Assembly: GCA_002269645.1 (NCBI GenBank)
Contig: NIVC01002511.1
Coordinates: forward strand, 62,001-126,000
Source: Macrostomum lignano
Taxonomy: Eukaryota
Length of the DNA stretch: 64,000 bases
Reading direction: 5' to 3'
Positions within the stretch are counted from its first letter, which is position 1, and each line of letters opens with the position of its first letter. The notes under the pieces are model-generated. The model was not told the origin of the DNA and searched no databases. It saw nothing but the letters and a program-made list of their open reading frames with translations. Positions 20,410 to 61,654 of this stretch are shown here, piece after piece. Made by a program: the position numbers and the translations under genes.

Positions 20410-20790
20410 CCCTCCCAGATCCTCAGTTGCTTAACCAGCCTCCCAAATCCTCAGTTTCTGAACTAGCCTTCTAGATATTCAGTTGCTGAACCAGCCTCCC
20501 AGATCCTCAGTTGCTTAACCAGCCTCCCAAATCCTCAGTTTCTGAACTAGCCTCCTAGATATACAGTTGCTAAACCAGCCTCCTAGATCTTCAGTTGCTG
20601 AACCAGCCTCCCAGATCCTCAGTCGCTGGGCCAGCCTCCCAGATCCTCAGTTGCTGAGCCACCACTCTCCCAGATCCTCAGTTGCTGAGCCACCACTCTC
20701 CCAGATCCTCAGTTGCTGGGCCAGCCTCCCAGATCCTCAGTTGCTGAGCCACCACTCTCTCAGATCCTCAGTTGCTGGGCCAGCCTCCCT
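20410..20790 (+). repeat. 28-bp CCAGCCTCCCAGATCCTCAGTTG minisatellite family, second array
   Basis: More degenerate copies of the 6942 unit. Confidence 0.9.
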
Positions 20791-38680: not shown

Positions 38681-39289
38681 GGCATCCATTAAAAAGACAG
38701 ATAAATAGAGACACACAGACAGACATTAACAAGATAGATAAACAAATGCAAGAAACAGACGGTTGGACAAACGCAACAGGTAATAACTGCACGCATGTTT
38801 CACTGTGAGCACACTGACTCACCTGACAATTACATCTTTAATGCTGCTACACAGTCCTGAAGCGACAGTCGTTTAACAAACACTCCACCCTACCCTACAA
38901 TAAGCTACAGAACAGTGTAAAACAGAAAGCCTATCAGCTGTCAATCAAGTGCTCGGGATTGAACTCTCGCTTTTTCTCACCGCGATGAGCCAGCATTTAA
39001 TTAGAATTTTTACTCCAGCCCGCCAACATCGCTAAGCATGCGATGCGCATTTACCATTTTTATAGTAGAGACACGTACAATTAAATAAGAGTGGCGTCAG
39101 CAGGAAAGCAATCGAGCTGAAGCAGCTGAAAGATAGCAGCGACTCAGCGCAAAACTGCAGTGGTTTGCCTGTGCTAAAGCACTACAACTTGATGCTCAAT
39201 TCTAATGAACGCAGTGCTAATACTGAAAAGAATCACTACTGCCTTTGGCGAGACAAAAGCGGGAATCTGGAGGAGGCCGAGGCTCAGCA

Positions 39290-39880
39290 ATTAAGGATCT
39301 GGGAGGCTGGCACAGAAACTGAGGATCTGGGAGGCTGGCACAGAAACTGAGGATCTGGGAGGCTGGCCCAGAAACTGAGGATCTGGGAGGCTGGCACAGA
39401 AACTGAGGATCTGGGAGGCTGGCCCAGCAACTGGGGATCTGGGAGGCTGGCACAGAAACTAAGGATCTGGGAGGCTGGCTCATCAACTGAGGATCTGGGA
39501 GGCTGGCACAGCAACTAAGGATCTGGGAGGCTGGCTCATCAACTGAGGATCTGGGAGGCTGGCACAGCAACTGAGGATCTGGAAGGCTGGCACAGCAACT
39601 GAGGATCTCGAGGCTGGCCCAGAAACTGAGGATCTGGGAGGCTGGCTCATTAACTGAGGATCTGGGAGGCTGGCTCATCAACTGAGGATCTGGGAGGCCG
39701 ACCCAGCAACTGAGGATCTGGGAGGCTGGCCCAGCAACTGAGGATCTGGGAGGCTGGACCAGCAACAGAGGATCTGGGAGGCTGGCCCAGCAACTGAGGA
39801 TCTGGGAGGCTGGCCCAGCAACTGAGGATCTGGGAGGCTGGCTCAGCAACTGAGGATGTGGGAGGCTGGCCCAGCAACTG
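39290..39880 (-). repeat. 28-bp minisatellite family, third array (inverted)
   Basis: CAACTGAGGATCTGGGAGGCTGGCCCAG is the reverse complement of the 6942 unit. Confidence 0.95.
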
Positions 39881-41266: not shown

Positions 41267-44200
41267 TCAATCCAACAGTCTCACGCAGCAGATTGCATCC
41301 TCTGGTCGCATCTCCAGCAGGGCAACGCAGCCGTCATTGAAACTGAAGGCGTAGTCGCCATCGATCACCAACCTGGCGTCCCACATTCGAGACCGGACTC
41401 GAATCAGGTCCGTCACGCCGCGGCATTGATCGGCCGCGAACACGGAATTAACAACCGGATCCCGAACTGCCCAGGCCATGCGGATCAGCTCCGGGTCGAA
41501 TGTTAACGCAGAATTGTAGTTGCGCGCTATGCTAGCGATTTCGGCTGGAGTGTAGCGGCGACTGCGGCTGCCACTGCCGTCAGGTGAGTCAGCTAATTGG
41601 TTGGCGTAGTGCAGGATCTCCTCTACCTGGCTCTCGGCTGCAGGTGGGGGGATTTCTGGCTTTCTAGTTCGAGTTTAGGGGCGATTCCTAAAGTTTAGGG
41701 CAATTCCTAAAGTGAGTTTAGTGGCGATTCCTTAAGTGAGTTGAGGGCGATTCCTAAAGTGAGTTGAGGGCGATTCCTAAAGTGAGTTTAGTGGCGATTC
41801 CTAAAGTGAGTTTAGTGGCGATTCCTAAAGTGAGTTTAGTGGCGACTCCTAAAGTGAGTTGAGGGCGATTCCTAAAGTGAGTTTAGTGGCGATTCCTAAA
41901 GTGAGTTTAGTGGCGATTCCTAAAGTGAGTTGAGGGCGATTCCTAAAGTGAGTTTAGTGGCGACTCCTAAAGTGAGTTTAGTGGCGATTCCTAAAGTGAG
42001 TTTAGTGGCGATTCCTAAAGTGAGTTTAGTGGCGATTCCTAAAGTGAGTTTAGTGGCGATTCCTAAAGTGAGTTTAGTGGCGATTCCTAAAGTTTAGGGC
42101 GATTCCTAAAGTGAGTTTAGTGGCGACACCTAAAGTGAGTTTAGTGGCGATTCCTAAAGTGAGTTTAGTGGCGACTCCTAAAGTGAGTTTAGTGGCGATT
42201 CCTAAAGTGAGTTTAGTGGCGATTCCTAAAGTGAGTTTAGTGGCGACTCCTAAAGTGAGTTTAGTGGCGATTCCTAAAGTGAGTTTAGTGGCGATTACTT
42301 AAGTGAGTTGAGGGCGATTCCTAAAGTGAGTTGAGGGCGATTCCTAAAGTAAGTTCAGAGGCGATTTCTAAAGCTTAGGACGATTCCTTTAAAGTGAGTT
42401 TACAGCGATTCCTATAGAAATTTTAGAGCGATTCGTATAGAGATTTTAGGTCTTTAGGAGTTAAGGGAGTTAAGAATCTATTTTTAGCGGGAATTTAAAT
42501 ACGCGATTTCTTAGCGACAATCAGACTTCAAGGGCGATTAAAAAATGAAAATTTTTTTAACTCACACAGGTGATTGATATGGAAATACCAAGAAGTGGAA
42601 CCGGTCCCAGTGCACACGGTCACTCCGGAGGATTTCTGCTTTCGCATTCGCCCCTCTCGGCCCAGTCCCATCTCATAATAGGACACTCTGGCCGAAAGGG
42701 ACTCGCCGATGAACACTTCGTTCAGTGCGAGCACTGGCAGCGGGCTGAGCTCATGCTCCTGGCACTGCAGCATCGGCTGCCGGCGCAGCCAAGCCTCCTC
42801 GAGCTCCTTGTAGTGCTCCGAAAAGCGGTACTCCGGGTACTTTAGGTGTAACGACTGCAGGCGGCTGGCGCCATCGGCTGGGCTGTCCGCTGACGACTGG
42901 CTGCTGGAAGGCAATCCCGTTGACATGGAAACCCGGATGCGTTGCCGCCACAGCCAGCGGAACCTGGGCGGATGGGGAGCGGCGGATCAGGATCTGGGAT
43001 GGGGAATGGGGATTTGGGATGGGGAATGGGGATTTGGGATGGGGAATGGGGATCTGGGATGGGGAATGGGTATCTGGGATGAGGAAAGGGGTCTAGGAGG
43101 CAGTGTTAGCTTGAACTGAGGCTATTGCGCAATTCGAGTTCTTAAACTGGGGATCTGGGATCAGCATTAAACCTGTCCGCCTCGTGACTAAAGGGCCGGT
43201 CCATTGTTCCGGACTGCGGGCCCATGATAAGCGCAGAGGCGCCGCTGTCTCTCTTGCAACCCAAACTGCCAACTCCGATGCGACACTGTGAGAACTGCTG
43301 TCAATATCAGAGCTCAACTGGGTGCGAATTTGCCTCTGATGTCTGCATATTGAGCAGATGGAGGCGCAACTACTGATAATGTAAGCTGAGTGGCTGCTGC
43401 ACCTGGGTCTGGGAGGGCGGTGGCTGAGCCTGGGGTCTGGGAGGGTGGTGGCTGAGCCTGGGGTCTGGGAGGGCGGTGGCTGAGCCTGGGGTCTGGGAGG
43501 GCGGTGGCTGAGCCTGGGGTCTGGGAGGGCGGTGGCTGAGCCTGGGGTCTGGGAGGGTGGTGGCTGAGCCTGGGGTCGGGAAGGGCGTGGCTGAGCCTGG
43601 GAGGGTGGTGGTTGAGCCTGGGAGGGTAAGTGGCTTGGCCTGGGGTCTGGGAGGGTGGCCCAGCAACTTAGGATCTGGGAGGATGGCACAGCAACTGACA
43701 CTCTGGGAGGCTGGCCCAGCAACCGAGGATCTGGGAGGCTGGCTCAGCAACTGAGGATCTGGGAGGCTGGCCCAGCAACCGAGGATCTGGGAGACTGGCC
43801 CAGCAACTGACACTCTGGGAGGCTGGCACAGAAACTGAGGATCTGGGAGGCTTGCCCAGCTACTGACACTTTGGGAGGCTGGCCCAGCAACCGAGGATCT
43901 GGGAGGCTGGCCCAGCAACTGAGGATCTGGGAGGCTGGCCCAGCAACTGACACTTTGGGAGGCTGGCCCAGCAACTGAGGATCTGGGAGGCTGGCACAGC
44001 AACTGACACTCTGGAGGCTGGCCCAGCAACCGAGGATCTGATGCGAGACTCCGCAGGCTCACCTTCCAGCCAGCAAGGCATCGATGGCATCGGGCGCAGT
44101 CTTGCTGGTCGGCATGCACAGGTAGCCTTCTGACTTTCCCGGATCGGTGTTGACGCCAATCAAAGGCTTAGTGGCGGATTTAATCCGGCTGGCGGCCAGC

Positions 44201-45870: not shown

Positions 45871-47031
45871 TGCACTTATTAATATTCTGTTTTTTAAATA
45901 TTAGTAGACTGATAGATAGCAGGAAAATTTTGATTTAACATTGCACAATTGATTGAGTAGTTTTTAGGTTTGATGACTGGCTGTAAAATGTAAAATTTTT
46001 GGATAAAGACCTAATTGCATTAATGCTAGTTTGTCAAGCAATCTCAATTGTATTAGAGACAAAGCAAAGTAGAGACTTTGGTAAGGATATTTCTTGTTTT
46101 TGTTAAAAGGATAGGCCACAATAAAGTGTTGATTAAATATAGTTAGCATGTGGTAAATCAGGTGGCAAATATGGATAGCAAATCAAAAATAAAAATATAC
46201 TGCATAATTACAATTATCTATCTGGTCATACTAAATTATCTACTTGCTGGTTGGAATTTTTATCAGTGGCTATTACTTGTCTAACTATAACTTTTTACTC
46301 TTTTTGTAGTGTGTTATAAAATAATTCTACTTAAATTTATTGTAGTAAACTAACATATGCATATTCATATTATGGCTATGACATTTTCCCAAAGTAATGT
46401 TTTTACAAATCATAGAAATCGCATTTTGGCAAAGAGTTATATTATATAAAAAATAGAATTATATTGCAATTTTACAAATCTGATAAATTGCAAAAGAAAT
46501 GTTAAAGTGCCAAATATATAAAAAGTGTAAGTAACAAATAAAGAATAAGCTTTTACTTTACAAATTAAAAAAGGAAATTTGAAGTAATAAAGAAGTAAGA
46601 GAAACAAATCTATCTATGCCTTGTTAGGTCTGACTCTAGGCCTAACCTTATTGCTTTGAGTTTTGTAACAAAGAAGATAGAATAGAGTTTGGTAGGATGC
46701 TTTGCAGTTGCAACATAGTAAGTATGACAAAAAGGTAGCCTATGGCTATGTTTTACTTGCATTACAGTAATATAATTTCAATCAAAAACTTCTAATAGCC
46801 ATTCTTATCAACTAAAATGATACAAATCTTGCTAAACTTTAGGATACAATTAATAAATAATATGCAACAAACTTGCTAAACTAATTAATAATTTAATAGG
46901 CTAAACTAAGCAATGCTCAAGACTTTGAAAATTCAACTTTATATTGCGCTGATAGGCTATGGCCTGGGTTTTTTGCTACTGCTAAGATTCAAAATAGCAT
47001 CAAAGGTCATACTTCAAGTGCATGGTCATTT

Positions 47032-48045
47032 GCACTTGACAGCTGCTGTGACAACACCGGACGGCCTATTGGACTCCTTTGAGACATCCTCCGGAGTACT
47101 TCAGGGAGATATGCTGGCGCCGTCCTGTTCGTCCTGGTGCTTGACTGGGTGCTGCAGATTGCTCTTCCTACCGACGACGACGGTTTTCTGCTGCGGCGAC
47201 GTGTGGGTCGAAGTCAACCAGAGAAGCGGCTCAGCGTGCTTGGCTACGCCGACGACCTCGCCCTGTTGTCCTCGACAGTCAAGGGCGCCCAACGGCAGCT
47301 GGACAGGCTAGTTGCCATTGCGGCGAGTGTCGGCCTGGTGGTCAACACGCAGAAGACCATTGTGCTATGCGTGCCGGACAACATCGAGGCTGCAATATTC
47401 TGCCGAGGCGCTGACGGGCAGGCGACCGAACTCCTGCGATGTCAGCAGTTCGTCTACCTTGGCGGTCTGGTTCCAGACGCTCGCAAGGACCTGCGACGCC
47501 GTCGCGGGCTTGCCTGGGCTGCTTTTCGTTCTGTGAGGGCAGTCCTAGCCTGCAGTCCGAGGCCCTACCAGACCGCCAGAGGGCGGCGCTGTTCCAGGCG
47601 GTAATCGAGACCGTCCTGCTGTACAACGCTGAGACCTGGACGCTGACGGACTCACTCGAACAGCAAGTCGATGCAGCGCACGCTGGCCTGCTGCGCACCA
47701 CCTTCAACATCGGCGTCGAGCGAGTCACCAACGCGGCACTCTATCGCCGCGCTGGCCTGCCACGTCCAAGTGATCTACTGCGCCATTGGCGACTCCAGCT
47801 CGCAGGCCATCTCATCTGCGCCGAGTCGTACTGCCCACAGCCAGTGCAGGTGCTGCTGCTCACTCTGCAGGCACCCTACCGGCGAGGTCAAGCGCAAACT
47901 CGGCATTATGTCGACTGTCTGCTGGCTGACGCCGGCGCCCTGGACACTGCCGGTGCTGCGGCCTTTGTTCGCGCCCAAGCCATGAAGCGCACCCTGTGAC
48001 GCTGACTTTTGCCATCCTGACAGCGTATTTTGTTGTTGTTGTTGT
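47032..48045 (+). mobile_element. 5'-truncated RTE-like non-LTR retrotransposon (RT C-terminal part, frameshifted)
   Basis: SGVLQGD.LAP, LGYADDLALL, GLVVNTQKT, FVYLGG and VLLYNAETW motifs spread across shifted frames. It has a (TTG)n tail and a 10-bp TSD ATGGTCATTT at 47022-47031 and 48046-48055. Confidence 0.88.
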
Positions 48046-49692: not shown

Positions 49693-50249
49693 TTTGCAAC
49701 ATTACTGACTTACACTGGCTGTGTAACTTACTTTTCAACCAAAAATGTAATTTACCTTTGAAAGAAAGCTAAGCAAAATAAACATAATTTTGGATAAACA
49801 ACAAGAGTAACTATAATAATATTATTTAGACTAAATGCTGCACCATCTAATTAGTACTATATGAACATTACTGGTGCTTTTTTAATAGCTAATCAGCATG
49901 CCACCTAATGGTAGCCTATGAAGTAATTTGTAAATTGTCTTAATACAATGTAGTGAGCTTACTATATAAGTCATGATTCATGAAAGTCTAGAATGCTTAT
50001 GCCTAGAAGAAAAGTGAAATAAATACAGTGTGATACAATTTGCAATGTATTATAGTGATGGATCGAAATTCGATTTCGATTTCGATATTCCGAATTTTGA
50101 AACTAATTACGCATTTGTTTCCCGATCGATATTCAGATTGATATTCGAAAACTAACAAAATCTCTGCTCTGCAAAAATATTTTAGAACGCCGTTTGACAG
50201 GAAAAAAAGTGCAACCAAGAACATTGCAAAAATTAAGTTTCAGCTTGAT

Positions 50250-50895
50250 CCATCACTCTGGCTCGAAATGGCACCGATTTTCGATGTGCTCCCATTTAAA
50301 ATACATGTGATTTTATAAGGCAGATCGATATTCGAGTTCGCTCACTTTGGCTTGACCATTCAACATGAAATTTTACACACTAAAAAGTGCAACTCAGAAA
50401 CCGATAAATATACAGTTTCAGCTCGATCCGTCACTCTGGCTCGAAATGGCACCGATTTTCGATGTGCTCCCATTTAAAATACATGTGATTTTATAAGGCA
50501 GATCGATATTCGAGTTCGCTCACTTTGGCTTGACCATTCAACATGAAATTTTACACACTAAAAAGTGCAACTCAGAAACCGATAAATATACAGTTTCAGC
50601 TCGATCCGTCACTCTGGCTCGAAATGACACCGATTTTCGATGTGCTCCCATTTAAAATACATGTGATTTTATAAGGCAGATCGATATTCGAGTTCGCTCA
50701 CTTTGGCTTGACCATTCAACATGAAATTTTACACACTAAAAAGTGCAACTCAGAAACCGATAAATATACAGTTTCAGCTCGATCCGTCACTCTGGCTCGA
50801 AATGGCACCGATTTTCGATGTGCTCCCATTTAAAATACATGTGATTTTATAAGGCAGATCGATATTCGAGTTCGCTCACTTTGGCTTGACCATTC
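50250..50895 (+). repeat. 178-bp tandem subunits, left arm (~3.6 copies)
   Basis: TCACTCTGGCTCGAAATG recurs at 50253, 50431, 50609 and 50787. Confidence 0.95.
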
Positions 50896-51533
50896 GACTC
50901 GAAGTTTTGTTACATTTTGATAGCAAACATTTTTTTATCTTGCTCATTTATTTTACGCAGGAGGCAGAACATTGTTAAGTTCGGATGTTGGTGCATTCAG
51001 AAAAGTATATACAATGAGGAACGCGAAATCTATAGCTCTCGTATATAGCTCACAGAAGGCAGGTTGCGGATCTAATTAGGGGTTGCAAATCTTATTCAGC
51101 TTCCCGAAGAATGGTGTTTTCTAAGCAATACTAAGCAAGCAGTACATTCTATTTATTGCCTCGTCTTGCAATTTCCAGCAGCTATGTGAGAATTACCTTA
51201 CTTATTAAATTAAGACTTAAAGCAGGGGGGCAACAGCCCTCGGCCCCAGGGCCAGATCCAGCCCTTCCAATTCGCCCCCAAGGCCCTTGGTGATCTAGCA
51301 TTGCATTAGGCCCCACTCAAGAAATTCCTGGATCCGCACCTGACTGATGGAGTATGAGAATTTGTAATGGAAAAATATAACAATAAAAACGGTGCGATTG
51401 CACGGACGATGAGATACGCGATTCATAATTCCTACTATACGATTGCCTGTATGCTTTAAGAAACAGTCTAGATGTACTCGTAAAATTAAAAAAGCGCTGG
51501 TTAAATTCACTAGTTTGCTGTTGCTTCGTTCGT

Positions 51534-52569
51534 TCAGATCGAAAATAAGTTTTGGCAGCTCGAACAGATAAAGGTGTCGGTCGGGCCACTGGCCACGCAT
51601 TTGTCGTGGTACCAATTCAGGCAGGATGGGCATTCAATCTGTAGTAGGTAATTTAATTTCAGCGTTAAATGGGGTTTCCCCAACTTTTATTTAGCATATC
51701 AGTAATGGTTAATTACTTCCTTTTTAGCTTTTTTTGCCACTGTTGGCTACCTACAGTGAAATGGTTTTAGTACTAGCTACTTATCGGCGATATATCGTTA
51801 ATACTCGTAGATTAGCCTATTTCCGGAAATAACGACTTCAACGAAGAGCAGCATAATATAGTAAAGCCTTTAAAATGTAGTCAATAAAGCAAGCGTACTG
51901 CTACCCACCCAGTCAATCGTCCGATTTCTAGCACAAGCATCAGGTACCATTCTGTTGCACGTGCTGCAGGTCGCCTGGCTTCCTCCTTGACTGTAATTCT
52001 GGATAACCTGCCAGATGTGACACCGGTACTTTTCTAGGGATCCTGTGTCGTTTCTGAAGTGTAGCGGTGATCCAGTTGCAATAGCCCTGGCATACAGACA
52101 GACGAAAACACCGCAGCTATAGCCGTCATTCTGCATGGTCCGTGGCAAAGTATCTGGCTCAAAAGTCACCGGGCTGCTTCTGAACACAGGTGCTGTTTGG
52201 TCCACGAACGGAGCGACGACATTCGAATCGAGGAGTTGTCTGCAGGAGTATGAAATGTAGTTTAGCGGAATATTTTAAGTACGGATTTTTAGTATATGGA
52301 TGGACGTTCAGGGCTTTATGCTCTATACGATAGCAAGTAAATTTAGAGGCAAAAAGTTAATCAGCACATTGTACGAGCGTAGCTCGTAGGTGCGATTATA
52401 CGACACAAATGACCTACTTCCATCGATGAACTATGGACTTCAATTGACGAATTGCAGCGGCTCCGTTTTTTAGTGAGTCCAGGATTAGAATTTTTCTGCT
52501 GGCACCGCAAATCACAATTAGATAAAAATGTGACCCGTGTAAGACCGGAACAACTATTTGACTTAGACC
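51534..52569 (-). CDS. Ulp1/SENP (peptidase C48)-like protease and PHD finger exons of the foldback element
   Basis: Exons 52569-52418, 52239-51909, 51638-51534 splice in phase. They read IVVPVLHGSHFYLIV..ILILDSL (His, Asp), QNDGYSCGVFVCLYA (Gln, Cys), then CSTC...DW|IECPSCLNWYHDKCV...FICSSC (C4HC3 PHD) and stop. Confidence 0.8.
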
Positions 52570-53283
52570 CTGCAAATGGACACGGTGTTCGGTAATCATT
52601 TAGTAACTGTAGCATGCGCAGGCAGGCAGTTCGGGCACTCAGTTTGCACTCCGTGACCCCCACCCAGCCTATCCACTTTCCCCTGCTCGAGCACATCCCA
52701 ACGCGCACTCAATTAACCGGAAATCTGAGTTCCGCAGGACAATAAATATGCAGACACAGCCACCTTTTATTTCTCCACTAGGTAACTAACACTCGCAATA
52801 ACCAGCTAGAGTTGCTCGCTACAGTAACCTTTAAACCATTCATTTGTAAATTGCTGGCAAATTTGACCAAAAATACGCTCAAAGGGTGGCTACAGTGGCT
52901 ATCATGGTGTCCAGCTTTTACATATTCCATATTCGAGTGTATCGTTTCATAAGGGAAGCGTACGTAAGAAAACTATATACACGGAGAGGATCAACGGATA
53001 AATTCTTCCGTTAACCCCCCTAAATAAGGCGTGAAAAAAATTATTACCTTCCATCCAAGAGTTCTCGTCAGCAAATTTTGGCTCTCGCTAGTCAGTTCTC
53101 CATCATGTAGGTCAAGGATACTGCGAAAATCTCCCTCGCTCATCACTACCTGTGTTGCATTGGTTGACGTTACAGCGGTGCAGTAGGCCAGCAGAATCTA
53201 AGATGGATGGACAGCGCATCACATTATTGTATATTGGACAGTAGACACTGTTAGGGCGTGCCAGGAAGCATGGATAACTCAAC

Positions 53284-55143
53284 TTACCGAATACTCGAGC
53301 AAGTTTTTTTTTCGAGACTTTGGCGATGCAACTGTGTTACAGGTATATCACTTCCTGAACCAGGGAGTATAAAAATTAGATCACTGTAGTCCCCATGAGC
53401 TTGGCCACCACGTTGACGTCCTGAGCGGCGAGCGACCCCTGATTTGAATTCTGTTTGGCATTGATTTAAACCTTTATTTTTTCGAGGTGTACATCTGAAT
53501 TTGGGCCGGTCGTTTTGTTTTAATATGTTATTTCGTCTGCAACGCGAACCTTTTCTGTTCATTGGGCAGCAGTCGGGTTCATCCGGGTCGACGAGAGGTG
53601 AGTGCATGCTTCCAGGGTCCTCCGGGTCGACGAAAGGTGAGTGCATGCTGCCAGGGTCCTCCGGGTCGACGAAAGGTGAGTGGCATTCATGTTCTTCCGG
53701 TGTGGGTGAATGGGCGTAATCAGATTCGTCCAGGTCGACGACATTGGAAAAATGTGCATGACTAGCCTTTCCAACGTACAAAGAACGACGCCCTTGCCTT
53801 TTCTTTCTGTCCCATCCTTCTGTTGCCACATCCTCAGTTATCTCAGATTTCCTTTTTCTCCTGAAGCATGCCGCAGGTGTTCGCTGCAAAATGCGACACT
53901 CCGATACTCGTCGAAGAACAAGTGGGACATAGTGCTCAATAAACTTCGTTAACGAGGTTTTAACCGAAAACTTTTTTTTTACCATTGCGAACCAGCTTTC
54001 TACATGCGCGTTTGAATAAAACGATTTTGTATCTTTTTCTATTAAATGACTCCACGAAAACATGGCCCAAAAGGGTAATATTGCCAGGTATCGAAGTAAA
54101 AAAAAGTCTATCAGCTGGGGACAGTAAAACTCATTTTGTTTCAGATGTTCATGTGCCGATATGGTCGCCGTTGTGTCTATATTTTGATCGAGAATCCGCT
54201 TAAAGTAAATGTAGTACGGGGAGTTCTTTAGGATTGCTTCGCCGTCTGATTCTGTCGTGGTATCTGCGTCGTGAGTCACTCTCTTTCGGGCAGCCACTGT
54301 GTGTTCTACATAACGAGACCCAAAAATAGTAAGTGTGTCTTTAATGATTCCGACGCAAGTATCCTGATTGTTGGAATACTGGATTAAGGAAAAAAACTTT
54401 AGAAACAATGTCCGGCATCGTGGAGTGATGGATAGTTTCTTGCAATAGTCCGACACGGATTTAATAACGTGGTTACTACACAGGAAGACTCCATAACTTA
54501 TCTCACTTGGAACTTGTTGCATGAAAAAGTGGTAGTGCATGTTAAGGTATGTAGCCACATCAGTATGGTGGAAGTCGAGACAAGCGTATATCTGTGCCCA
54601 AGAAAAATCTGTGACGAAAAGTATGCTTACATCAGTTGAGCAGGGCGTGCTCATAAATTGCAAAATTTTATGCCGTAAAACCTTCAAGAAGTGAGAAATC
54701 GATGCAACGTTGTGCGAGTCGGATATTAAATTAGCGACAGAAGCAGATGGTACAGAATTCGTTGCCGATGTGACGATAGAATACAGCAGTATGGAGCCAG
54801 GTGAAGTACTTTTCTCAATCAGGGATCCCGTGGCGTCTATATGCAATACCGTAGGTGCAGCGTTGCGCAGCATTGACGTAAGCAGTGTTATCTCATTTTG
54901 GGAAAACATTACTACGCGGAGGGGATCTAAACAACGTTCAAGTATCATTCCGGGTAGCAATGGATGAGGAAATTTCTCTTCATATACCAATTTCAGCTTC
55001 CCTAAGGCAACGAAAAGCAGAGGGTGCAGCTGCTCCTCTTTTTCCATTAGACTTTTAATATTGTGCATGACAGTTTTTGTTTTGCATGCATCCCAGTTAC
55101 GAGACAATATAAAAGGCAAATTATCTAGCGACAAAAAACGCAT
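53284..55143 (-). CDS. Mutator/NOF-like DDE transposase (main ORF, 619 aa)
   Basis: LHIDATGS (D1), FVTDFSWA (D2), LCSNH (CxxH) and NAHVESWF (E), followed by the basic RRKRK motif. The ORF ends at a splice donor CG|GTAAGT (53288), consistent with splicing to the downstream exons. Confidence 0.8.
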   Translation of the reverse strand: MRFLSLDNLPFILSRNWDACKTKTVMHNIKSLMEKEEQLHPLLFVALGKLKLVYEEKFPHPLLPGMILERCLDPLRVVMFSQNEITLLTSMLRNAAPTVLHIDATGSLIEKSTSPGSILLYSIVTSATNSVPSASVANLISDSHNVASISHFLKVLRHKILQFMSTPCSTDVSILFVTDFSWAQIYACLDFHHTDVATYLNMHYHFFMQQVPSEISYGVFLCSNHVIKSVSDYCKKLSITPRCRTLFLKFFSLIQYSNNQDTCVGIIKDTLTIFGSRYVEHTVAARKRVTHDADTTTESDGEAILKNSPYYIYFKRILDQNIDTTATISAHEHLKQNEFYCPQLIDFFLLRYLAILPFWAMFSWSHLIEKDTKSFYSNAHVESWFAMVKKKFSVKTSLTKFIEHYVPLVLRRVSECRILQRTPAACFRRKRKSEITEDVATEGWDRKKRQGRRSLYVGKASHAHFSNVVDLDESDYAHSPTPEEHECHSPFVDPEDPGSMHSPFVDPEDPGSMHSPLVDPDEPDCCPMNRKGSRCRRNNILKQNDRPKFRCTPRKNKGLNQCQTEFKSGVARRSGRQRGGQAHGDYSDLIFILPGSGSDIPVTQLHRQSLEKKTCSSIR

Positions 55144-55189
55144 TCTAAACGCCTCCGTAGGTCCTAACTCTCGAATATCGGAACAAAAT

Positions 55190-55960
55190 TCAGCTCTCTC
55201 TCTCCTTGTTGTTAATGGTCAAAAAATTCTGCTTTGATTTCCTTGAATTGTAGCTTCTAATATGGTTGTAACCAGTCATTTTTAGGCAACATGTAGTGAC
55301 AGATTTCATTGCACGGCAAATAACTTCATTAGTGTTCGGCAGTGAGTATCTATAGCGAGGCCCCGATTGGGTCTCCTCCAATCGTAAATTGATTAGACGG
55401 ATATCTTCCTCACCTATCTCTATACTTAGTCGCTCAGACGCTTCACAAAACTGAATCTCTTCTTCAAACGATAGATTAGCAGAGGAGCTAGCACCAAACG
55501 AAGGACTAAGGCTGCAGGATTCATTTAACTCAGCGGCTTGAACACCTTCCTGGACGGAGGGTTCATCGCTTTCATCGTCAGTGTCCAGATGTTCAACGGA
55601 ATTGCAGTCAGGTTTATGTTTCTCCGAACTGGTGTTACTTTGGTTCACAGACTGTACATTATCGTTTTTTTTGCTTTCTTCCCTCCGTCGATCTTCAGCG
55701 GACGCTCGGACAGGAGACGCGAGCACGTTATTTTTTGCACATCTCCTTCTCTTTACAGTCTTTTTTCTCGAACGGAATCCCGTGCCATCCGCTTCTCTAT
55801 AACCATTCGATCTGCGAATGAAATTCCACAATATGACTCGATTACGCAACCGGTTTCTAATTTTCAGGACCTTACACAGGTAGGTATAGATTGGAATTGA
55901 TGTACGGAAACTGGATGGTCGTTCGTAAGTATCTGGAGCATTCTTCAGGGCAGTCCGAAC
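55190..55960 (-). CDS. probable N-terminal part of the transposase (separated from the main ORF by a frameshift)
   Basis: The frame is open from an acceptor TTTTTAG| at 55960 (VRTALKNAPD...LRNRVILWNF...RKKTVKRRR). It stops in a (GA)n tract that overlaps the frame of the main ORF. Confidence 0.5.
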   Translation of the reverse strand, partial: VRTALKNAPDTYERPSSFRTSIPIYTYLCKVLKIRNRLRNRVILWNFIRRSNGYREADGTGFRSRKKTVKRRRCAKNNVLASPVRASAEDRRREESKKNDNVQSVNQSNTSSEKHKPDCNSVEHLDTDDESDEPSVQEGVQAAELNESCSLSPSFGASSSANLSFEEEIQFCEASERLSIEIGEEDIRLINLRLEETQSGPRYRYSLPNTNEVICRAMKSVTTCCLKMTGYNHIRSYNSRKSKQNFLTINNKERES

Positions 55961-56074
55961 CTAAAAAGTTCATTTTGTTAGAGGAGTCTAAATAATTATG
56001 ACACCACCTCGTGCTGTCTACCTATGTACCTGTTTGATCCAATTTGTGTATAACTCAAAAATAAGCGTTCCAAA

Positions 56075-56325
56075 CTGTGGCGGATCTAGAATTTTATTCT
56101 GGGGGGGGGCGGTCCAAGTTTGGGGCGCCAACATGAGTTTGAGGGGCGCCAATTTTAAGCTAGGGGCGCAAAAAATGCGCGGAGGGGGCGAAAAATCAAG
56201 TTTAAAGGGAGCGCAAGTTCGCGGTTCACAGTTTTTGGTTTTTGGGGGGCGCAATGTGGTACAACGAGCTGTGTCGGCAGCCGCCCGCCCCGCCCCCGCC
56301 TCCCCCCCCCCTAAATCCGCCCCTG
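56075..56325. mobile_element. GC-rich MITE inserted in the foldback element
   Basis: TIRs CTGTGGCGGATCTAG / CTAAATCCGCCCCTG; flanks GTTCCAAA and GTTCAAAC form an imperfect 8-bp duplication. Confidence 0.65.
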
Positions 56326-57529
56326 GTTCAAACGTTAAAGATGCTAACGCAAAATGAACATAACCAACGAATTTCCCTTAACACATTAAAATTAGAACAG
56401 CAGGCGTTACTTCTACAAAAACTCTTAAAAATTTCACAAATTAACGTTTAACGCTCATACACGGATTAACCACTTGAGTTATTGAAACAGAAATTGTCAT
56501 TGCCCACCTCGTTCTTTGATGGAAATCCACCGCAAGTGGTTACTACCAGAGTAAAAGCCACAAGAGCAGCAACCACGACGGTTACTTTCCGCATTGCTCG
56601 AAGGTCTACAACACATTTTTCGAGGACATACACTGAATATTACGTAAGTGGCTAGTACAAATAGTTTCACTCAATATTTTCCAGGTAACTCTGGACGCTG
56701 AATAGCAGTTGGAAGTCGAGAAATAAATCAAGGAAAGATAAATAATCTACGTGTTCTTAATTTTAAGCATAGTGTACTTGTTTTTCCTACCTTAATTGAC
56801 GATTGTGATTCGATTACTGTCGCTCCGACAAAATAGTGACGTTTGCTATAGAAAAAAAGTTAATTCTACCCGATTTATTTTTCTTTAGCTAGTAATGCTG
56901 ATTAATAGAAATTTGGCTCTCGATGCTTGAAGGCGAAAAAACAATAGCGCAGGAGCCCACTGGAGTGGGTATACTAGCTTATATAATTTATCAAAGAAGC
57001 CCAAAAACTTCTCGGACATGTGAATGTACATTAGGCCGATACCACTACTTCGAAAAATCGATTAACGGGGATACAGTCTGACCAGAAGTGGGGGGTCAGT
57101 ATGCAGGGGCGGCGTGGCGGTGCAATGCTATTTGACAGAAAAGACGGATATTTTCTCACTTAGGTTGTACAGTAAGAGAAGCGATTACCATAGACTATCT
57201 TGAATTTTTTATTGTACAAGATGTGACTCGTGAGCTAAAAATTCGAAACGTGACATGCATCGGTGACAATAGAACAGTAGCAAGAGTCTATTTAAGTCCT
57301 GGATGTATTTTATGGAACTCTAACAACATACTGGCGAAGCCAGCATAACGTGTTTGCCTCCTTCATCCACACATGTGAGCGAACGTAGATTACTTGTTTT
57401 CAAAAGTTTCCCCGAACTTAGTTAATCAATATAAATGAGGCCAAAACAATGTTCTGCCTTCCTGCGTAAATAAATGAGCAAGATAAAAAAATGTTTACTA
57501 TCAAAATGTAACAAAATTTTGAGTCGAAT

Positions 57530-58715
57530 GGTCAAGCGAAGCCAAAGTGAGCGAACTTGAATATCGATCTGCCTTATAAAATCACATGTATTTTAAATGG
57601 GAGCACATCGAAAATCGGTGCCATTTCGAGCCAGAGTGACGGATCGAGCTGAAACTGTATATTTATCGGTTTCTGAGTTGCACTTTTTAGTGTGTAAAAT
57701 TTCATGTTGAATGGTCAAGCCAAAGTGAGCGAACTCGAATATCGATCTGCCTTATAAAATCACATGTATTTTAAATGGGAGCACATCGAAAATCGGTGCC
57801 ATTTCGAGCCAGAGTGACGGATCGAGCTGAAACTGCACATTTATCGGTTTCTGAGTTGCACTTTTTAGTGTGTAAAATTTCATGTTGAATGGTCAAGCCA
57901 AAGTGAGCGAACTCGAATATCGATCTGCCTTATAAAATCACATGTATTTTAAATAGGAGCACATCGAAAATCGGTGCCATTTCGAGCCAGAGTGACGGAT
58001 CGAGCTGAAACTGTATATTTATCGGTTTCTGAGTTGCACTTTTTAGTGTGTAAAATTTCATGTTGAATGGTCAAGCCAAAGTGAGCGAACTCGAATATCG
58101 ATCTGCCTTATAAAATCACATGTATTTTAAATGGGAGCACATCGAAAATCGGTGCCATTTCGAGCCAGAGTGACGGATCGAGCTGAAACTGTATATTTAT
58201 CGGTTTCTGAGTTGCACTTTTTAGTGTGTAAAATTTCATGTTGAATGGTCAAGCCAAAGTGAGCGAACTCGAATATCGATCTGCCTTATAAAATCACATG
58301 TATTTTAAATAGGAGCACATCGAAAATCGGTGCCATTTCGAGCCAGAGTGACGGATCGAGCTGAAACTGCACATTTATCGGTTTCTGAGTTGCACTTTTT
58401 AGTGTGTAAAATTTCATGTTGAATGGTCAAGCCAAAGTGAGCGAACTCGAATATCGATCTGCCTTATAAAATCACATGTATTTTAAATGGGAGCACATCG
58501 AAAATCGGTGCCATTTCGAGCCAGAGTGACGGATCGAGCTGAAACTGTATATTTATCGGTTTCTGAGTTGCACTTTTTAGTGTGTAAAATTTCATGTTGA
58601 ATGGTCAAGCCAAAGTGAGCGAACTCGAATATCGATCTGCCTTATAAAATCACATGTATTTTAAATGGGAGCACATCGAAAATCGGTGCCATTTCGAGCC
58701 AGAGTGATGGATCAA
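57530..58715 (-). repeat. 178-bp tandem subunits, right arm (~6.6 copies, inverted relative to the left arm)
   Basis: GCCAAAGTGAGCGAAC recurs about every 178 bp from 57541 to ~58610. Confidence 0.95.
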
Positions 58716-61654
58716 GCTGAAACTTAATTTTTGCAATGTTCTTGGTTGCACTTTTTTTCCTGTCAAACGGCGTTCTAAAATATTTTTGCAGAGCAGAGAT
58801 TTTGTTAGTTTTCGAATATCAATCTGAATATCGATCGGGAAACAAATGCGTAACTAATTTTGCATCGAAATAATTTTGATTTTGATTTCGAATTTCGACA
58901 CCATTCATCGAAAATCATTTTGAAATTTTGGTTATATTTTAACAATTTAGACATTGATGATCATGCTATACAAGTAAGAAAATCTATAGGAAGTGAAACG
59001 AAGTGCGGTTCAAAGACTCAGTGGGGAGGTGAGAATCGTCTTTTCTACAAGAAAAGATTGTGCGGGGCACACTGCACACACTGTTCTAGGCCTTGTGCTG
59101 CACCCACCTCAACCTCCACAAGCCCACTGGCTGAACTCATTGGCGTGGATTTTAATTGGCTAAAGATTTAAAGCCTTAATAAGATGGATATAGGCTACTC
59201 GTATCTAGATCTTCAGCTTAAACAGCGGTGAAGTATAATACAACTTCTACTATATTTCTATGTGGACGAGTGTATAATACATAATTCACCAGCATTTTAT
59301 ATTTTGTATTTTTTAAAGTAAGTTAAATATTAAGTATTCTGGTTTAAACATATCAAAGATACTTTTTATAAAATATGTAAGCTCATACATGCAGAGGCAA
59401 GGTGTTAACCTTTTTGCATAGCAAAAAAGTAAAAATTTGTTAAGCTTAAAAATTTTGATTTCGATTTTGATTTCAATTTTGATTTCGATTCTAAGGAACC
59501 GAAAATTTTGATTTCGATTTGGATTTGAAAAATAATTTCGATCCATCACTACAATGTATTCTGGGTTTTTTTGGGTCATATGGGGTTTTTTGGCCCCTTA
59601 AAAAATCTTATTGGCAACTGGATTTTTGGCATCAAAGGCCAATCTGGCAACTTCATTTTCCTTGTACCAGTTGCCAATTTAAAAAAATGATTTTGTAAGT
59701 GTAATAAAAGACTACACAAAAATTTAATAAAACTATATAAATCAATGTGATGGAATTATTAGTTTGTTATTATTTGCAGAATAGATAGCAATCTTAGAGT
59801 TGAGAAGAAAACAAATTTCTGCTTTTTAAGTGCAGCTTTGGAAATATCCATCCTTGAGAATGTAGCAGGCCTGCTTCCTCTATCTCTCAGAATCCCACTA
59901 AGTGCCACAAAGTTGTAGCAGGGGTTCCTACTTCTAGCTTATAATTCCACAGCTGAATCACCAAGTTGTTGCAGGCCTTCTGGCTCTCTCTATTTAATTC
60001 TAAAGTTTAAACACTGAACTGTACTAAAACTGCTAAATTTGCTATTTCTAAGAATCCTATTTCTATGCTTATGTGTACTTTTACGTTATGGGCTATCGTC
60101 GCTACGAGTTACCCCTGGTAGCTTCAGTGCCCGAGCGGCAAGACACTGCTGACTACTGTTAAATTCCTAAAATTATCCAGTCCAAACACGGCGCGTTTAC
60201 GACAGACCGAGGGGTTTCCGGCTTCCTGTCTCTCACGACTTAGAACTGCATCACGCTAATCTGAGCAACCTGAAAATTCTCCCTTCCTGGGTAATCCAAC
60301 CTTTCTACACTGGGTATTCCACCCTTTGTACTGGGTATTCCACCCTCTTTGCACTGGGTATTCCACCCTCTTTACTGGGTATTCCACCCTCTTTGATCAG
60401 CAATCCCTGCTTGTCACTGTACTGGCAAAACGCTTTCTGCTATCCAACACGGTAACTTAGTTTGCAATACTGCTTCAAAGGACTAATTCAGAAGAACCAA
60501 GAAATCTTAATTTCCTGTTAACTGATTAGGAACCCGAAAGGTTGAGGTTTCGTTTTATTTTGGCCTTGTATTTATACTAGTTAGAGTCTTGTTTCATTGG
60601 CTTACGTATCTAACATTAAAACAAATGAATAGCTAAAACAAATTATTCGCATCATTAAAACAATATTATTCAGTAAAACAAATTTACGAATTAAAACAAA
60701 TTATACGGTACTTGTTATTTTGGCGGGAATTTGATTTCGCGGAAAGATACTAATTTAAGCATAGGCCCTTCTACAAGAATATGGCTAGTTGCCAATGGGC
60801 AACCAAAAATAGGCATTGGCAATTGGATTTTGAGCCCAAGGGCCAGCTGACAACTAGATTTCCAACCTTAAAAAACTCAGAAAGTATTCATTTATAGACT
60901 CAAGAATAATTCTACTTGCTAGATAATTTTGCCACAGAACATGAGAGCCCTGGTTTAGACAGCTCATCAGATGCAAAACACAAATATAGTAGAGATACAA
61001 GCTATTTAAACCTGCAGATTTTGAGACTGCTAAATTCTAAGTTTATGAAACTACGAGTATTTTTGCATAGATTCTTAAATTGAAGTCAGGCTCTAAACTC
61101 TTAACTGGTTAGCAAAAATTTTAAAACTCCCGCGCGCTCAGGGTACGAATTTCCTAGAAAGCATCTTTCGCTAATTCCGGAATATAATCTGTCTATCCCC
61201 ACTATTTATAAATTCACAAAATAAGTTAAGTTCAAGTAAACTTATTTAATTATAACGCACATTCATTGCACTAGCTAACTATCAGCAAATCAATTCCTTT
61301 TTGTCGAATTCTGGAAAGTTTTTCTTTCGGTTTAATTAGGTATGGAAGTTTTTCATAGTTAGTGCATTGTTTATATTTGTATATAAATTGATACTTACTG
61401 ACCAACTTTTATTAGAATCGCGGTTTGCTACCTTATATTAGTATAACATGTCAGCTAGCGCTTATGTGCTTGCATGGTGTACGTACATGTACATGTACAT
61501 ATACATGTATGTACATGTTGAGTCGATCCAGTCGAGCTTCTTTCGAAATCGATATTTCCTAAAAAGTGAGCCTCCACATCCCGTGCGCAATTTCAGAGCT
61601 AAGTATAAGGGTCCGGGCCCAAAAATAAAGTGCCCTCTGTCTGATGTTCATGAC

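What the first reader, a model, noticed from the sequence alone, without database searches (positions are those of the whole stretch)
50053..59551. Foldback (FB-NOF-like) Mutator transposon whose transposase gene appears fused to a SUMO-type protease and a PHD finger
Seen in the sequence: matching 16-bp termini, a 9-bp flanking duplication (CAATGTATT), kb-scale inverted arms, a D/D/CxxH/E transposase ORF ending in a perfect splice donor, and downstream in-phase exons with a full Ulp1 catalytic set (H, D, Q, C) and a C4HC3 PHD finger. Established: Drosophila FB-NOF combines foldback arms, a 9-bp TSD and a Mutator-related ORF, and some plant and animal MULEs carry Ulp1 domains. Inference: one transcript encodes transposase-protease-PHD, so the element may read chromatin marks (PHD) and remove SUMO or ubiquitin-like modifications involved in silencing. 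I do not recognise this three-part architecture in a foldback element. I could not resolve the linking exon(s) at ~53240-52820; a candidate frame, MSEGDFRSILDLHDGELTSESQNLL, resembles the Ulp1 N-terminal helix.
Basis: partly seen in the sequence, partly recalled or inferred. Interest (0 to 1): 0.85.

Follow-up and report, generated by a model that had tools for sequence, protein, structure and literature searches.

The report
Rehavkus foldback transposon, damaged copy
This is a 9.5-kb cut-and-paste transposon of the already described Rehavkus group, whose transposase is fused to a SUMO-type protease and a PHD finger as in many relatives; this copy has a frameshifting deletion, so it is an ordinary and probably non-autonomous member.

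Summary
The termini are identical and inverted (18 nt). CAATGTATT flanks both ends. The kb-scale inverted arms are built from a 178-bp tandem unit. A 644-codon minus-strand frame carries D/D/CxxH/E. Downstream GT-AG exons, all in phase, encode a Ulp1 catalytic set and a C4HC3 finger.

The element is not a new architecture. A profile built only from the ORF's homologues scores the published Rehavkus transposase domains at 210-289 bits (hhalign 100%). Canonical Mutator controls score 2-8 bits. The size, 9-bp duplication, repeat-bearing foldback arms and PHD finger match Rehavkus-1_TC of Tribolium.

The transposase-protease-PHD fusion is a family trait. Relatives encode all three parts in one uninterrupted ORF. 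Of 75 long homologues, 18 hit Peptidase_C48, 20 PHD, 5 USP and 4 OTU.

This copy is damaged. About 149 bp are missing at ~55213. That removes the Cys/His half of the N-terminal zinc finger and shifts the frame. The N-terminal part of the protease domain could not be placed either.

The anti-silencing or chromatin-reading role is an untested inference. Verdict: new member of a known kind, modest interest.

The parts
50043..50051 (.). Left copy of the target-site duplication CAATGTATT. It is followed by one extra A at 50052.
50053..50070 (+). Left terminal inverted repeat TAGTGATGGATCGAAATT. It contains the 13-nt motif AGTGATGGATCGA.
50100..50976 (.). Left foldback arm, including the 178-bp tandem array at 50236-50895 (3.7 copies). 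Each unit carries one copy of AGTGAYGGATCGA, inverted relative to the terminal copy.
51534..51638 (-). Last exon: second half of the PHD finger (IECPSCLNWYHDKCV...CSSC) and the stop codon TGA at 51536-51534.
51909..52239 (-). Exon with the Ulp1 catalytic Q (52133-52131) and C (52115-52113), and the first CxxC of the PHD finger.
52418..52569 (-). Exon with the Ulp1 catalytic H (52530-52528) and D (52479-52477), 17 residues apart.
53048..53120 (-). Provisional linking exon (ILDLHDGELTSESQNLLTRTLGWK). Acceptor TTTTCGCAG|T, donor AAG|GTAATA.
   Evidence: An overlapping frame (ENSWMEGNNFFHALF) also weakly resembles the WL-helix of the protease, so this is unresolved.
53288..55212 (-). Large exon: transposase core (D 54837-54835, D 54609-54607, CxxH 54480-54469, E 54000-53998) followed by a low-complexity linker. 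The linker includes a 39-bp (13-aa) repeat at 53582-53682. The exon ends at the donor TCG|GTAAGT.
55213..55213 (-). Junction of a deletion of about 149 bp. The 50 codons for the Cys/His half of the N-terminal zinc finger are missing, and the frame shifts from -1 to -2.
55214..55960 (-). N-terminal coding region (frame -1), starting at the acceptor TTTTTAG|G at 55961/55960. It contains the first half of the zinc finger (CCLKMTGYNHIRSYNSRK) and runs into a stop at 55192-55190. It has no ATG, so the start codon must lie in a 5' exon that was not found.
57445..58898 (.). Right foldback arm, including the 178-bp tandem array at 57539-58724 (6.7 copies).
58899..59534 (.). Right-end segment that has no counterpart in the left arm. 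It starts with an inner degenerate copy of the terminus (about 58895-58915) and contains short ATTTYGATTTCG repeats at 59452-59490.
59534..59551 (-). Right terminal inverted repeat.
59552..59560 (.). Right copy of the target-site duplication CAATGTATT.

Best explanation
The interval 50053-59551 is one insertion of a Rehavkus-type DNA transposon. Repbase now files this foldback group under the MuDR/Mutator superfamily.

Shown: the element has identical inverted termini, a flanking 9-bp duplication, and arms made of a 178-bp tandem unit. Each unit repeats the 13-nt terminal motif. A multi-exon minus-strand gene has a DDE(CxxH) core that is homologous to the reference Rehavkus transposases. In the family, that core is fused in one protein to an N-terminal Cys/His finger, a Ulp1-type (C48) cysteine protease and a C-terminal PHD finger.

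Inferred mechanism: the transposase binds the terminal motif and its copies in the arms. It excises the element and reinserts it with a 9-bp staggered cut. The PHD finger would tether the protein to histone H3 tails. The protease would remove SUMO or another ubiquitin-like modifier from the transposase itself or from silencing factors.

Shown for this copy: a deletion of about 149 bp at ~55213 removes the Cys/His half of the N-terminal finger and shifts the frame. The first roughly 57 positions of the protease domain cannot be found. This copy therefore most likely cannot make a working transposase. It could move only if an intact relative supplied the enzyme; its ends are intact.
For: Structure.

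Homologues: 618 at E<=0.001 among 1.84 billion representatives, with the best at 52% identity.

Direct membership test: a profile built only from the ORF and its hits scores Rehavkus-1_TC 289 bits, -3_TC 265, -1_HR 210, -1_DY 143, 1_AP 107 and -2_NVi 89. The ORF alone scores 59 bits against Rehavkus-1_TC over the whole DDE domain. hhalign gives 100% probability, E 1e-52. Five canonical MULE domains from the same published alignment score 2-8 bits, and hhalign gives 6.6%.

Literature: Rehavkus has a 9-bp TSD, TIRs of 26-400 bp, one ORF, a PHD finger and a minisatellite. Rehavkus-1_TC is 9485 bp, with 164-bp repeats in 5-8 copies in its inverted termini. Rehavkus elements are foldback transposons with subterminal tandem repeats.

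Fusion: P0002, P0004 and P0005 contain all the parts. L004 is a single ORF from the E-motif to the PHD finger. tblastn with these proteins hits both the core and the protease exon of the window. Pfam on 75 long homologues finds C48 in 18, PHD in 20, UCH in 5 and OTU in 4. The spliced C-terminus of the window hits Peptidase_C48 at E 2e-11, 44.5 bits against a cut-off of 20.7.

Deletion: residues 1-47 of the closest relative map to 55354-55214 in one frame and residues 98-356 to 55212-54436 in another. Residues 48-97 are absent.
Against: No transcript data exist, so every splice junction is a prediction. The stretch 53288-52569 is ambiguous: two overlapping frames each weakly resemble the protease N-terminal helix.

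The PHD hit of the window is below Pfam's cut-off (16 against 24 bits).

One extra base separates the left duplication from the terminus, so an 8-bp duplication cannot be strictly excluded.

No second copy of this family is in the window, and no empty site could be examined, so the ends rest on this one insertion.

The structure model of the core failed (pLDDT 36), so the RNase-H fold is inferred from motifs only.

The accessible Rehavkus literature mentions the PHD finger but not a protease. Only the DDE domains of the reference elements were available to me.
Confidence: 0.85

Rival explanations
1. The copy is autonomous and active: one transcript from this very locus encodes a complete transposase-protease-PHD protein.
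For: The arms are 99% alike, and the termini and the duplication are perfect. The core frame is open for 644 codons with all catalytic residues present. The downstream exons are in phase with consensus splice sites.
Against: Fifty codons that are conserved in all examined relatives are missing at 55213, and the two halves of the gene lie in different frames with 1 nt between them. That leaves no room for an intron. The first ATG of the core frame (55143) would give a protein with no N-terminal finger. The N-terminal part of the protease domain was not found.
Confidence: 0.07
2. There are two genes: a transposase plus a captured host Ulp1/PHD gene fragment carried as cargo, in the manner of a Pack-MULE.
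For: The protease and PHD parts lie in separate small exons downstream of a very large exon. The linking region is unclear.
Against: Distant relatives (25-40% identity) keep the same order of domains within single uninterrupted ORFs. Across 75 homologues, protease and PHD domains recur. The protease exon is itself homologous to the C-termini of those transposases.
Confidence: 0.04
3. It is a canonical Mutator-like element of the FB-NOF/Phantom kind rather than Rehavkus.
For: It has foldback arms of tandem repeats, a 9-bp duplication and a D/D/CxxH/E signature. Repbase merged Rehavkus into MuDR on weak similarity.
Against: No Pfam Mutator/MULE model is hit by the ORF or by any of the 75 homologues scanned. 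Canonical MULE domains score 2-8 bits, against 89-289 bits for Rehavkus. The NOF and Phantom proteins themselves were not available to me, so that comparison was not made.
Confidence: 0.05
4. It is a Zisupton/KDZ element. I recalled that group as having zinc-finger and SUMO-protease associations, and it makes 8-bp duplications.
For: An 8-bp reading of the duplication (AATGTATT) is formally possible. Zisupton genes are long and multi-exonic.
Against: The KDZ transposase model PF18758 (named) is not hit by the ORF or by any of the 75 homologues scanned. The Rehavkus references match at 100% hhalign probability.
Confidence: 0.02

Closest known systems
Rehavkus-1_TC (Tribolium castaneum) and the other Repbase Rehavkus families (-3_TC, -1_HR, -2_NVi, -1_DY, 1_AP)
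   Same: The 9-bp duplication. The size of about 9.5 kb (9485 bp for Rehavkus-1_TC). Inverted termini that carry 5-8 copies of a repeat of about 164 bp (here 178 bp, 3.7 and 6.7 copies). [quoted passage not shown] A homologous DDE domain with the same DATGS / TDFS / CxxH / NxxVE(N)WF motifs.
   Different: Only about 25% identity to the references, so this is a separate family. The closest sequence anywhere is 52% identical. The gene is split into at least six exons. A Ulp1-type protease domain is present, and the accessible descriptions of Rehavkus do not mention one. This copy bears a frameshifting deletion.
Drosophila FB-NOF foldback element (from memory, not tested)
   Same: Arms built of tandem repeats, a 9-bp duplication and an internal transposase-like ORF related to Mutator.
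   Different: No PHD finger or protease is known to me in NOF. Sequence relatedness was not tested here.
Plant KI-MULEs (Kaonashi) and plant CACTA elements carrying Ulp1/Peptidase_C48 domains (KI-MULEs from memory; the CACTA case appears among the search results, and that paper was not opened)
   Same: A cut-and-paste transposon that encodes a C48 protease.
   Different: The transposase clade is different (canonical MULE or CACTA). These are plants, not animals. In KI-MULEs the protease replaces or accompanies a decayed transposase rather than forming a conserved fusion with a PHD finger.
Zisupton / KDZ transposons
   Same: Long multi-exon transposase genes in animals, and a terminal-inverted-repeat element.
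   Different: 8-bp duplication. The transposase domain is PF18758, which this family does not hit.
Ginger1 transposons (from memory, not tested)
   Same: A transposase fused to ubiquitin-like-protein protease modules (OTU or Ulp1) and a PHD-type finger. This parallels the C48/OTU/USP alternation seen in this family.
   Different: Ginger uses a retroviral-integrase-type DDE domain and makes short duplications. It has no foldback arms.

Membership tests
Rehavkus (MuDR superfamily in Repbase) | Transposase DDE domain homologous to the reference Rehavkus transposases | tested here: met
   A family profile built without the references scores them at 89-289 bits. The window ORF alone scores 59 bits against Rehavkus-1_TC over the whole domain. 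hhalign gives 100%, E 1e-52. The reference sequences come from the supplement of PMC6446971.
Rehavkus (MuDR superfamily in Repbase) | 9-bp target-site duplication | tested here: met
   CAATGTATT lies at both flanks and nowhere else in the window. Caveat: one extra A lies between the left copy and the terminus.
Rehavkus (MuDR superfamily in Repbase) | Long inverted termini carrying subterminal tandem repeats (foldback structure) | tested here: met
   809-nt arms at 99%, with a 178-bp unit in 3.7 and 6.7 copies. Compare.
Rehavkus (MuDR superfamily in Repbase) | PHD finger in the transposase protein | tested here: met
   C-x2-C-x18-C-x2-C-x4-H-x2-C-x10-C-x2-C across the last two exons. The Pfam PHD score is only 16 bits for the window, but PHD is found in 20 of 75 homologues. 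The best PDB sequence matches are the KDM5B and BPTF PHD fingers.
Rehavkus (MuDR superfamily in Repbase) | Single transposase ORF | tested here: inconclusive
   There is one gene, but here it is split into at least six exons and broken by a deletion. Relatives have single ORFs.
Canonical Mutator-like elements (MULE/MuDR) | Match to Mutator transposase profiles or canonical MULE DDE domains | tested here: not met
   No Pfam Mutator/MULE model is hit by the ORF or by the 75 homologues. Five canonical MULE domains score 2-8 bits, and hhalign gives 6.6%.
Canonical Mutator-like elements (MULE/MuDR) | D, D, CxxH, E signature and a 9-11-bp duplication | tested here: met
   This signature is shared with several other superfamilies, so it does not discriminate.
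FB-NOF | Homology of the internal ORF to the NOF protein | not tested
Only the structural resemblance (foldback arms, 9-bp duplication) was seen.
Zisupton / KDZ | KDZ transposase domain (PF18758) | tested here: not met
   No hit for the ORF at E<=1, nor for the 75 homologues.
Zisupton / KDZ | 8-bp duplication | tested here: inconclusive
   An 8-bp reading, AATGTATT, is possible if the first terminal base is mismatched. The 9-bp reading fits the family that the sequence test supports.
Peptidase C48 (Ulp1/SENP) | Profile match above the curated cut-off | tested here: met
   The spliced C-terminus scores 44.5 bits, E 2e-11, against a cut-off of 20.7.
Peptidase C48 (Ulp1/SENP) | Catalytic H, D, Q, C with canonical spacing | tested here: met
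   H to D is 17 residues and Q to C is 6 residues. This is the same spacing as the yeast Ulp1 numbering I recall (H514, D531, Q574, C580).
Peptidase C48 (Ulp1/SENP) | Complete fold, including the N-terminal substrate-binding half | tested here: not met
   Only profile positions 86-192 of 217 (Pfam) and 58-168 of 177 (family model) are found. The first part is missing or unrecognisable in this copy.
Peptidase C48 (Ulp1/SENP) | deSUMOylating (or other Ubl-cleaving) activity | not testable with these tools
   This needs an enzyme assay.

The most novel reading that the evidence does not exclude
Rehavkus transposases as a clade carry an exchangeable ubiquitin-like-protein protease module (C48 in most, OTU or USP in others) together with a PHD histone reader. 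This module could be a transposon counter-defence in animals. Tethered to chromatin by the PHD finger, the protease would strip SUMO or ubiquitin from the host's heterochromatin or piRNA-guided silencing machinery, or from the transposase itself, at the element's own locus or at its target sites. The accessible Rehavkus literature lists only the PHD finger, so the protease module would be an undescribed, conserved part of the family.
Probability: 0.2. Interest if true: 0.65.

Novelty: new member of a known kind. Interest (0 to 1): 0.3.

Why it matters
For annotation: the interval should be masked as a Rehavkus/MuDR DNA transposon and not called as a host SUMO protease or PHD gene. Its 178-bp arm repeat is a likely seed of satellite DNA, as shown for Rehavkus in Tribolium.

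For biology: the modest point of interest lies in the family, not the locus. Across 75 long homologues from rotifer, springtail, fish and many unassigned assemblies, the transposase is repeatedly joined to a PHD finger and to one of three unrelated classes of Ub/Ubl protease. Recurrent acquisition of the same activity suggests that removing SUMO or ubiquitin is useful to the transposon. That can be tested with intact relatives. This damaged copy cannot answer the question by itself.

Tried and rejected
1. Pfam on the raw ORFs gave no transposase family and only weak C48 hits on single exons.
2. All three word-index protein searches were nearly empty: 0, 3 and 2 hits. Only the exhaustive HMMER search found the family.
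3. PDB sequence searches with the ORF and with the family profile found no transposase.
It gave pLDDT 36, which is unusable, so no fold search was run.
5. An exact look-up of the ORF in public assemblies found nothing, so the host organism stays unknown.
6. The metagenome scan for related loci returned only two short contigs. The Allacma and Adineta loci end inside or next to the gene. The ends and duplications of relatives therefore could not be compared.
7. The Zisupton hypothesis, my first guess from memory of a zinc-finger/SUMO-protease transposon, was rejected. PF18758 is not hit and the Rehavkus match is decisive.
8. The first brute-force splice enumeration timed out. The pruned version worked. 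Its top-scoring paths contain extra, implausible introns, so I kept the simplest two-intron path.
9. I looked for a hidden exon restoring the N-terminal half of the protease inside the 478-nt intron. Only insignificant hints turned up.
10. Rfam found nothing in the window.

Full report
**1. The observation**

- The 17-nt string TAGTGATGGATCGAAAT occurs exactly twice in the window, at 50053 on the plus strand and at 59551 on the minus strand. Only 0.17 matches are expected even with three mismatches allowed. Reading the two ends side by side shows 18 identical bases.
- CAATGTATT occurs only at 50043-50051 and 59552-59560.
- The arms 50100-50908 and 58052-58860 are 99% complementary over 809 nt. 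They consist of a 178-bp tandem unit, with 3.7 copies on the left and 6.7 on the right.

Two corrections apply.
- One extra A (50052) separates the left duplication from the terminus. An 8-bp duplication with a mismatched first terminal base is therefore formally possible.
- The right end has about 640 bp (58899-59534) with no counterpart on the left. This segment begins with a degenerate inner copy of the terminus.

A further finding concerns the terminal motif AGTGAYGGATCGA. It occurs once in every 178-bp unit, 13 times in all, and always inside the element (0.14 expected). Within each arm the internal copies are inverted relative to the terminal copy. I read these as repeated transposase-binding sites. 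That is an inference.

**2. The gene**

On the minus strand, a frame is open from 55218 to 53287 (644 codons).
- It hits no Pfam family and no PDB sequence.
- An exhaustive HMMER search of 1.84 billion representatives finds 618 relatives at E<=0.001. The best is 52% identical.
- In an alignment of 40 of them, T130, D204, C247 and H250 are invariant. D128, A129, G131, S206, N403 and E407 are nearly so.
- The frame ends at TCG|GTAAGT.

**3. The downstream exons**

A profile of the C-termini of the long relatives places three exons:
- 52584-52417, carrying H and D;
- 52175-51903, carrying Q, C and the first CxxC of the finger;
- 51638-51549, carrying the rest of the finger.

Reading the DNA gives GT-AG junctions in phase at GAA|GTAGGT...CCTGCAG|A and TGG|GTGGGT...CTACAG|A.

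The simplest good path has two introns, 53287-53121 and 53047-52570. Both have consensus sites, and they leave a 73-nt exon at 53120-53048. The spliced C-terminus hits Peptidase_C48 at 44.5 bits (E 2e-11, cut-off 20.7). It hits PHD at 16 bits, which is below the cut-off. The catalytic H and D are 17 residues apart and Q and C are 6 apart, as in yeast Ulp1 (numbering from memory).

There is a caveat. Only the second half of the protease profile is matched (positions 86-192 of 217; 58-168 of 177 in a family-specific model). Two overlapping frames around 53100-53030 each weakly resemble the protease's N-terminal helix. The model between 53288 and 52569 is therefore provisional, and the domain may be decayed in this copy.

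**4. Is the fusion real?**

At the family level, yes.
- P0002 (1212 aa), P0004 (995 aa) and P0005 (1010 aa) each contain, in one protein, an N-terminal Cys/His finger, the DDE core, an H/D/Q/C protease region and a C-terminal PHD finger.
- These proteins come from metagenome and read-assembly ORF calls. I take them to be uninterrupted ORFs, although only L004's reading frame was checked directly.
- tblastn with them hits both the core and the protease exon of the window.
- The metagenome contig L004 carries one ORF running from the E-motif through the protease to the PHD finger.
- Pfam over two non-overlapping sets, 75 proteins in all (mostly long homologues), finds Peptidase_C48 in 18, PHD in 20, UCH/USP in 5 and OTU in 4. 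This is a lower bound, because Pfam misses the divergent protease of P0002, P0004 and P0005. A family-specific model finds a C48-like domain in 36 of the 174 family proteins held.
- Named members come from the rotifer Adineta ricciae, the springtail Allacma fusca and the fish Triplophysa rosa.

**5. What family is it?**

My first guess, Zisupton, failed. Its transposase domain PF18758 is not hit by any member.

The literature describes Rehavkus as follows:
- a 9-bp duplication, inverted termini of 26-400 bp, one ORF, a PHD finger and a minisatellite;
- Rehavkus-1_TC specifically is 9.5 kb (9485 bp), with a 164-bp repeat in five to eight copies in its termini.

That is a close structural match to the 9499-bp element here.

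The supplement of Dupeyron et al. 2019 holds the DDE domains of six Rehavkus references and of canonical MULEs, so I could run a direct test.
- The profile built only from the window ORF and its database hits scores Rehavkus-1_TC 289 bits, -3_TC 265, -1_HR 210, -1_DY 143, 1_AP 107 and -2_NVi 89.
- The window ORF alone scores 59 bits against Rehavkus-1_TC, end to end over the domain.
- hhalign gives 100% probability, E 1e-52.
- Five canonical plant MULE domains score 2-8 bits, and hhalign gives 6.6%.

The element is therefore a Rehavkus. Its tie to Mutator proper is only the weak one on which Repbase merged the two groups.

**6. This copy is damaged**

The closest relative (L002, 52% identity) reads straight through the N-terminal finger...CCLVFRGYNHIRAPNSRKERSSFWTV-KASCKISGCDRKF...GTFDHSRSPSSCFRR-TTYDERQGF....
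- In the window, residues 1-47 of that ORF align to 55354-55214 in one frame.
- Residues 98-356 align to 55212-54436 in another frame.
- Residues 48-97 have no counterpart (DNA).

The missing block carries the C-x4/5-C...H part that is conserved in P0002-P0005 and P0167. The two halves abut with 1 nt between them, so no intron can rescue the frame. The copy has lost about 149 bp.

The upstream frame also has no ATG. It begins at an acceptor (TTTTTAG|G, 55961/55960) whose position matches one in L002, so a 5' exon remains unfound.

The near-identical arms and the perfect duplication argue for a recent insertion. The insertion was probably of an already deleted element, mobilised in trans. That last step is an inference.

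**7. Mechanism**

Shown: the anatomy, the homology, and the domain composition.

Inferred, from what is generally known of DDE transposases and of subterminal-repeat elements:
- The enzyme binds the terminal motif and its arm copies, excises the element, and inserts it with a 9-bp stagger.
- The PHD finger keeps two of the four aromatic positions of the BPTF cage: W in DWIEC and W in NWYH (alignment; cage residues from memory). It may therefore read H3K4 methylation.
- The protease's substrate cannot be told from sequence. That C48, OTU and USP modules alternate in the family suggests the useful activity is removal of a ubiquitin-like modifier in general.
Nothing here tests it.

**8. Verdict**

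This is a real element. However, it belongs to a known group whose hallmarks already include the foldback arms, the 9-bp duplication and the PHD finger. It is a new, distant family of Rehavkus, seen here as a deletion-bearing copy.

The one point that may not be in print is the regular presence of a Ub/Ubl protease in Rehavkus transposases. I could not see the full Repbase entries, so I do not claim it as new.

Noticed in passing
window 1-45400: The first 45 kb are packed with more than 25 different minisatellite and microsatellite arrays, with units of 4-106 bp and many at 90-100% match. The 28-bp unit GATCCTCAGTTGCTGGGCCAGCCTCCCA recurs at 6944-7657 and 20411-20789. It also recurs, reverse-complemented, at 39281-39880 and 43646-44040. 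These arrays explain the large 'ORFs' and the extreme GC skews.
   Followed up: partly
window 46900-48000 (+): A decayed fragment of a non-LTR retrotransposon reverse transcriptase (LGYADDLALLS motif), frameshifted over three overlapping ORFs. RVT_1 scores 25 bits, E 1.7e-5, below the cut-off.
   Followed up: partly
window 50245-50791 and 57635-58715: The 13-nt terminal motif AGTGAYGGATCGA is repeated once per 178-bp arm unit, in the orientation opposite to the terminal copy of the same arm. There are 13 copies, all inside the element, against 0.14 expected. These may be transposase-binding sites.
   Followed up: partly
window 58895-59534: The right arm ends with a degenerate inner terminus (GATGAATGGTGTCGAAATTCGA). 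About 640 unique bp then precede the true terminus. The left arm has only about 30 bp there. The origin is unknown; it could be a duplication of the end or a loss on the left.
   Followed up: no
window 53582-53682 (-): A 39-bp tandem repeat lies inside the coding linker between the transposase core and the protease. It encodes HSPFVDPEDPGSM 2.6 times.
   Followed up: no
family proteins P0164 and P0019 (not in the window): Two members of this eukaryotic transposase family are deposited as proteins of a bacterial MAG: Sedimenticola sp., MES9881301.1 and MES9883988.1. Most likely this is host or eukaryotic DNA binned by mistake.
   Followed up: no
L001 (Allacma fusca contig CAJVCH010547237.1) 1029-1356 and 7964-8367: The springtail relative is flanked by tandem arrays, 41-bp units upstream and 166-bp units downstream that run to the end of the contig. 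Its protein (P0168) has an N-terminal PHD finger, a USP-like stretch and a C-terminal C48 domain.
   Followed up: partly
family proteins scanned: Single family members also carry a YqaJ-like recombinase domain (E 2e-16) or a C2HC zinc finger (E 1e-8). These were not looked at further.
   Followed up: no
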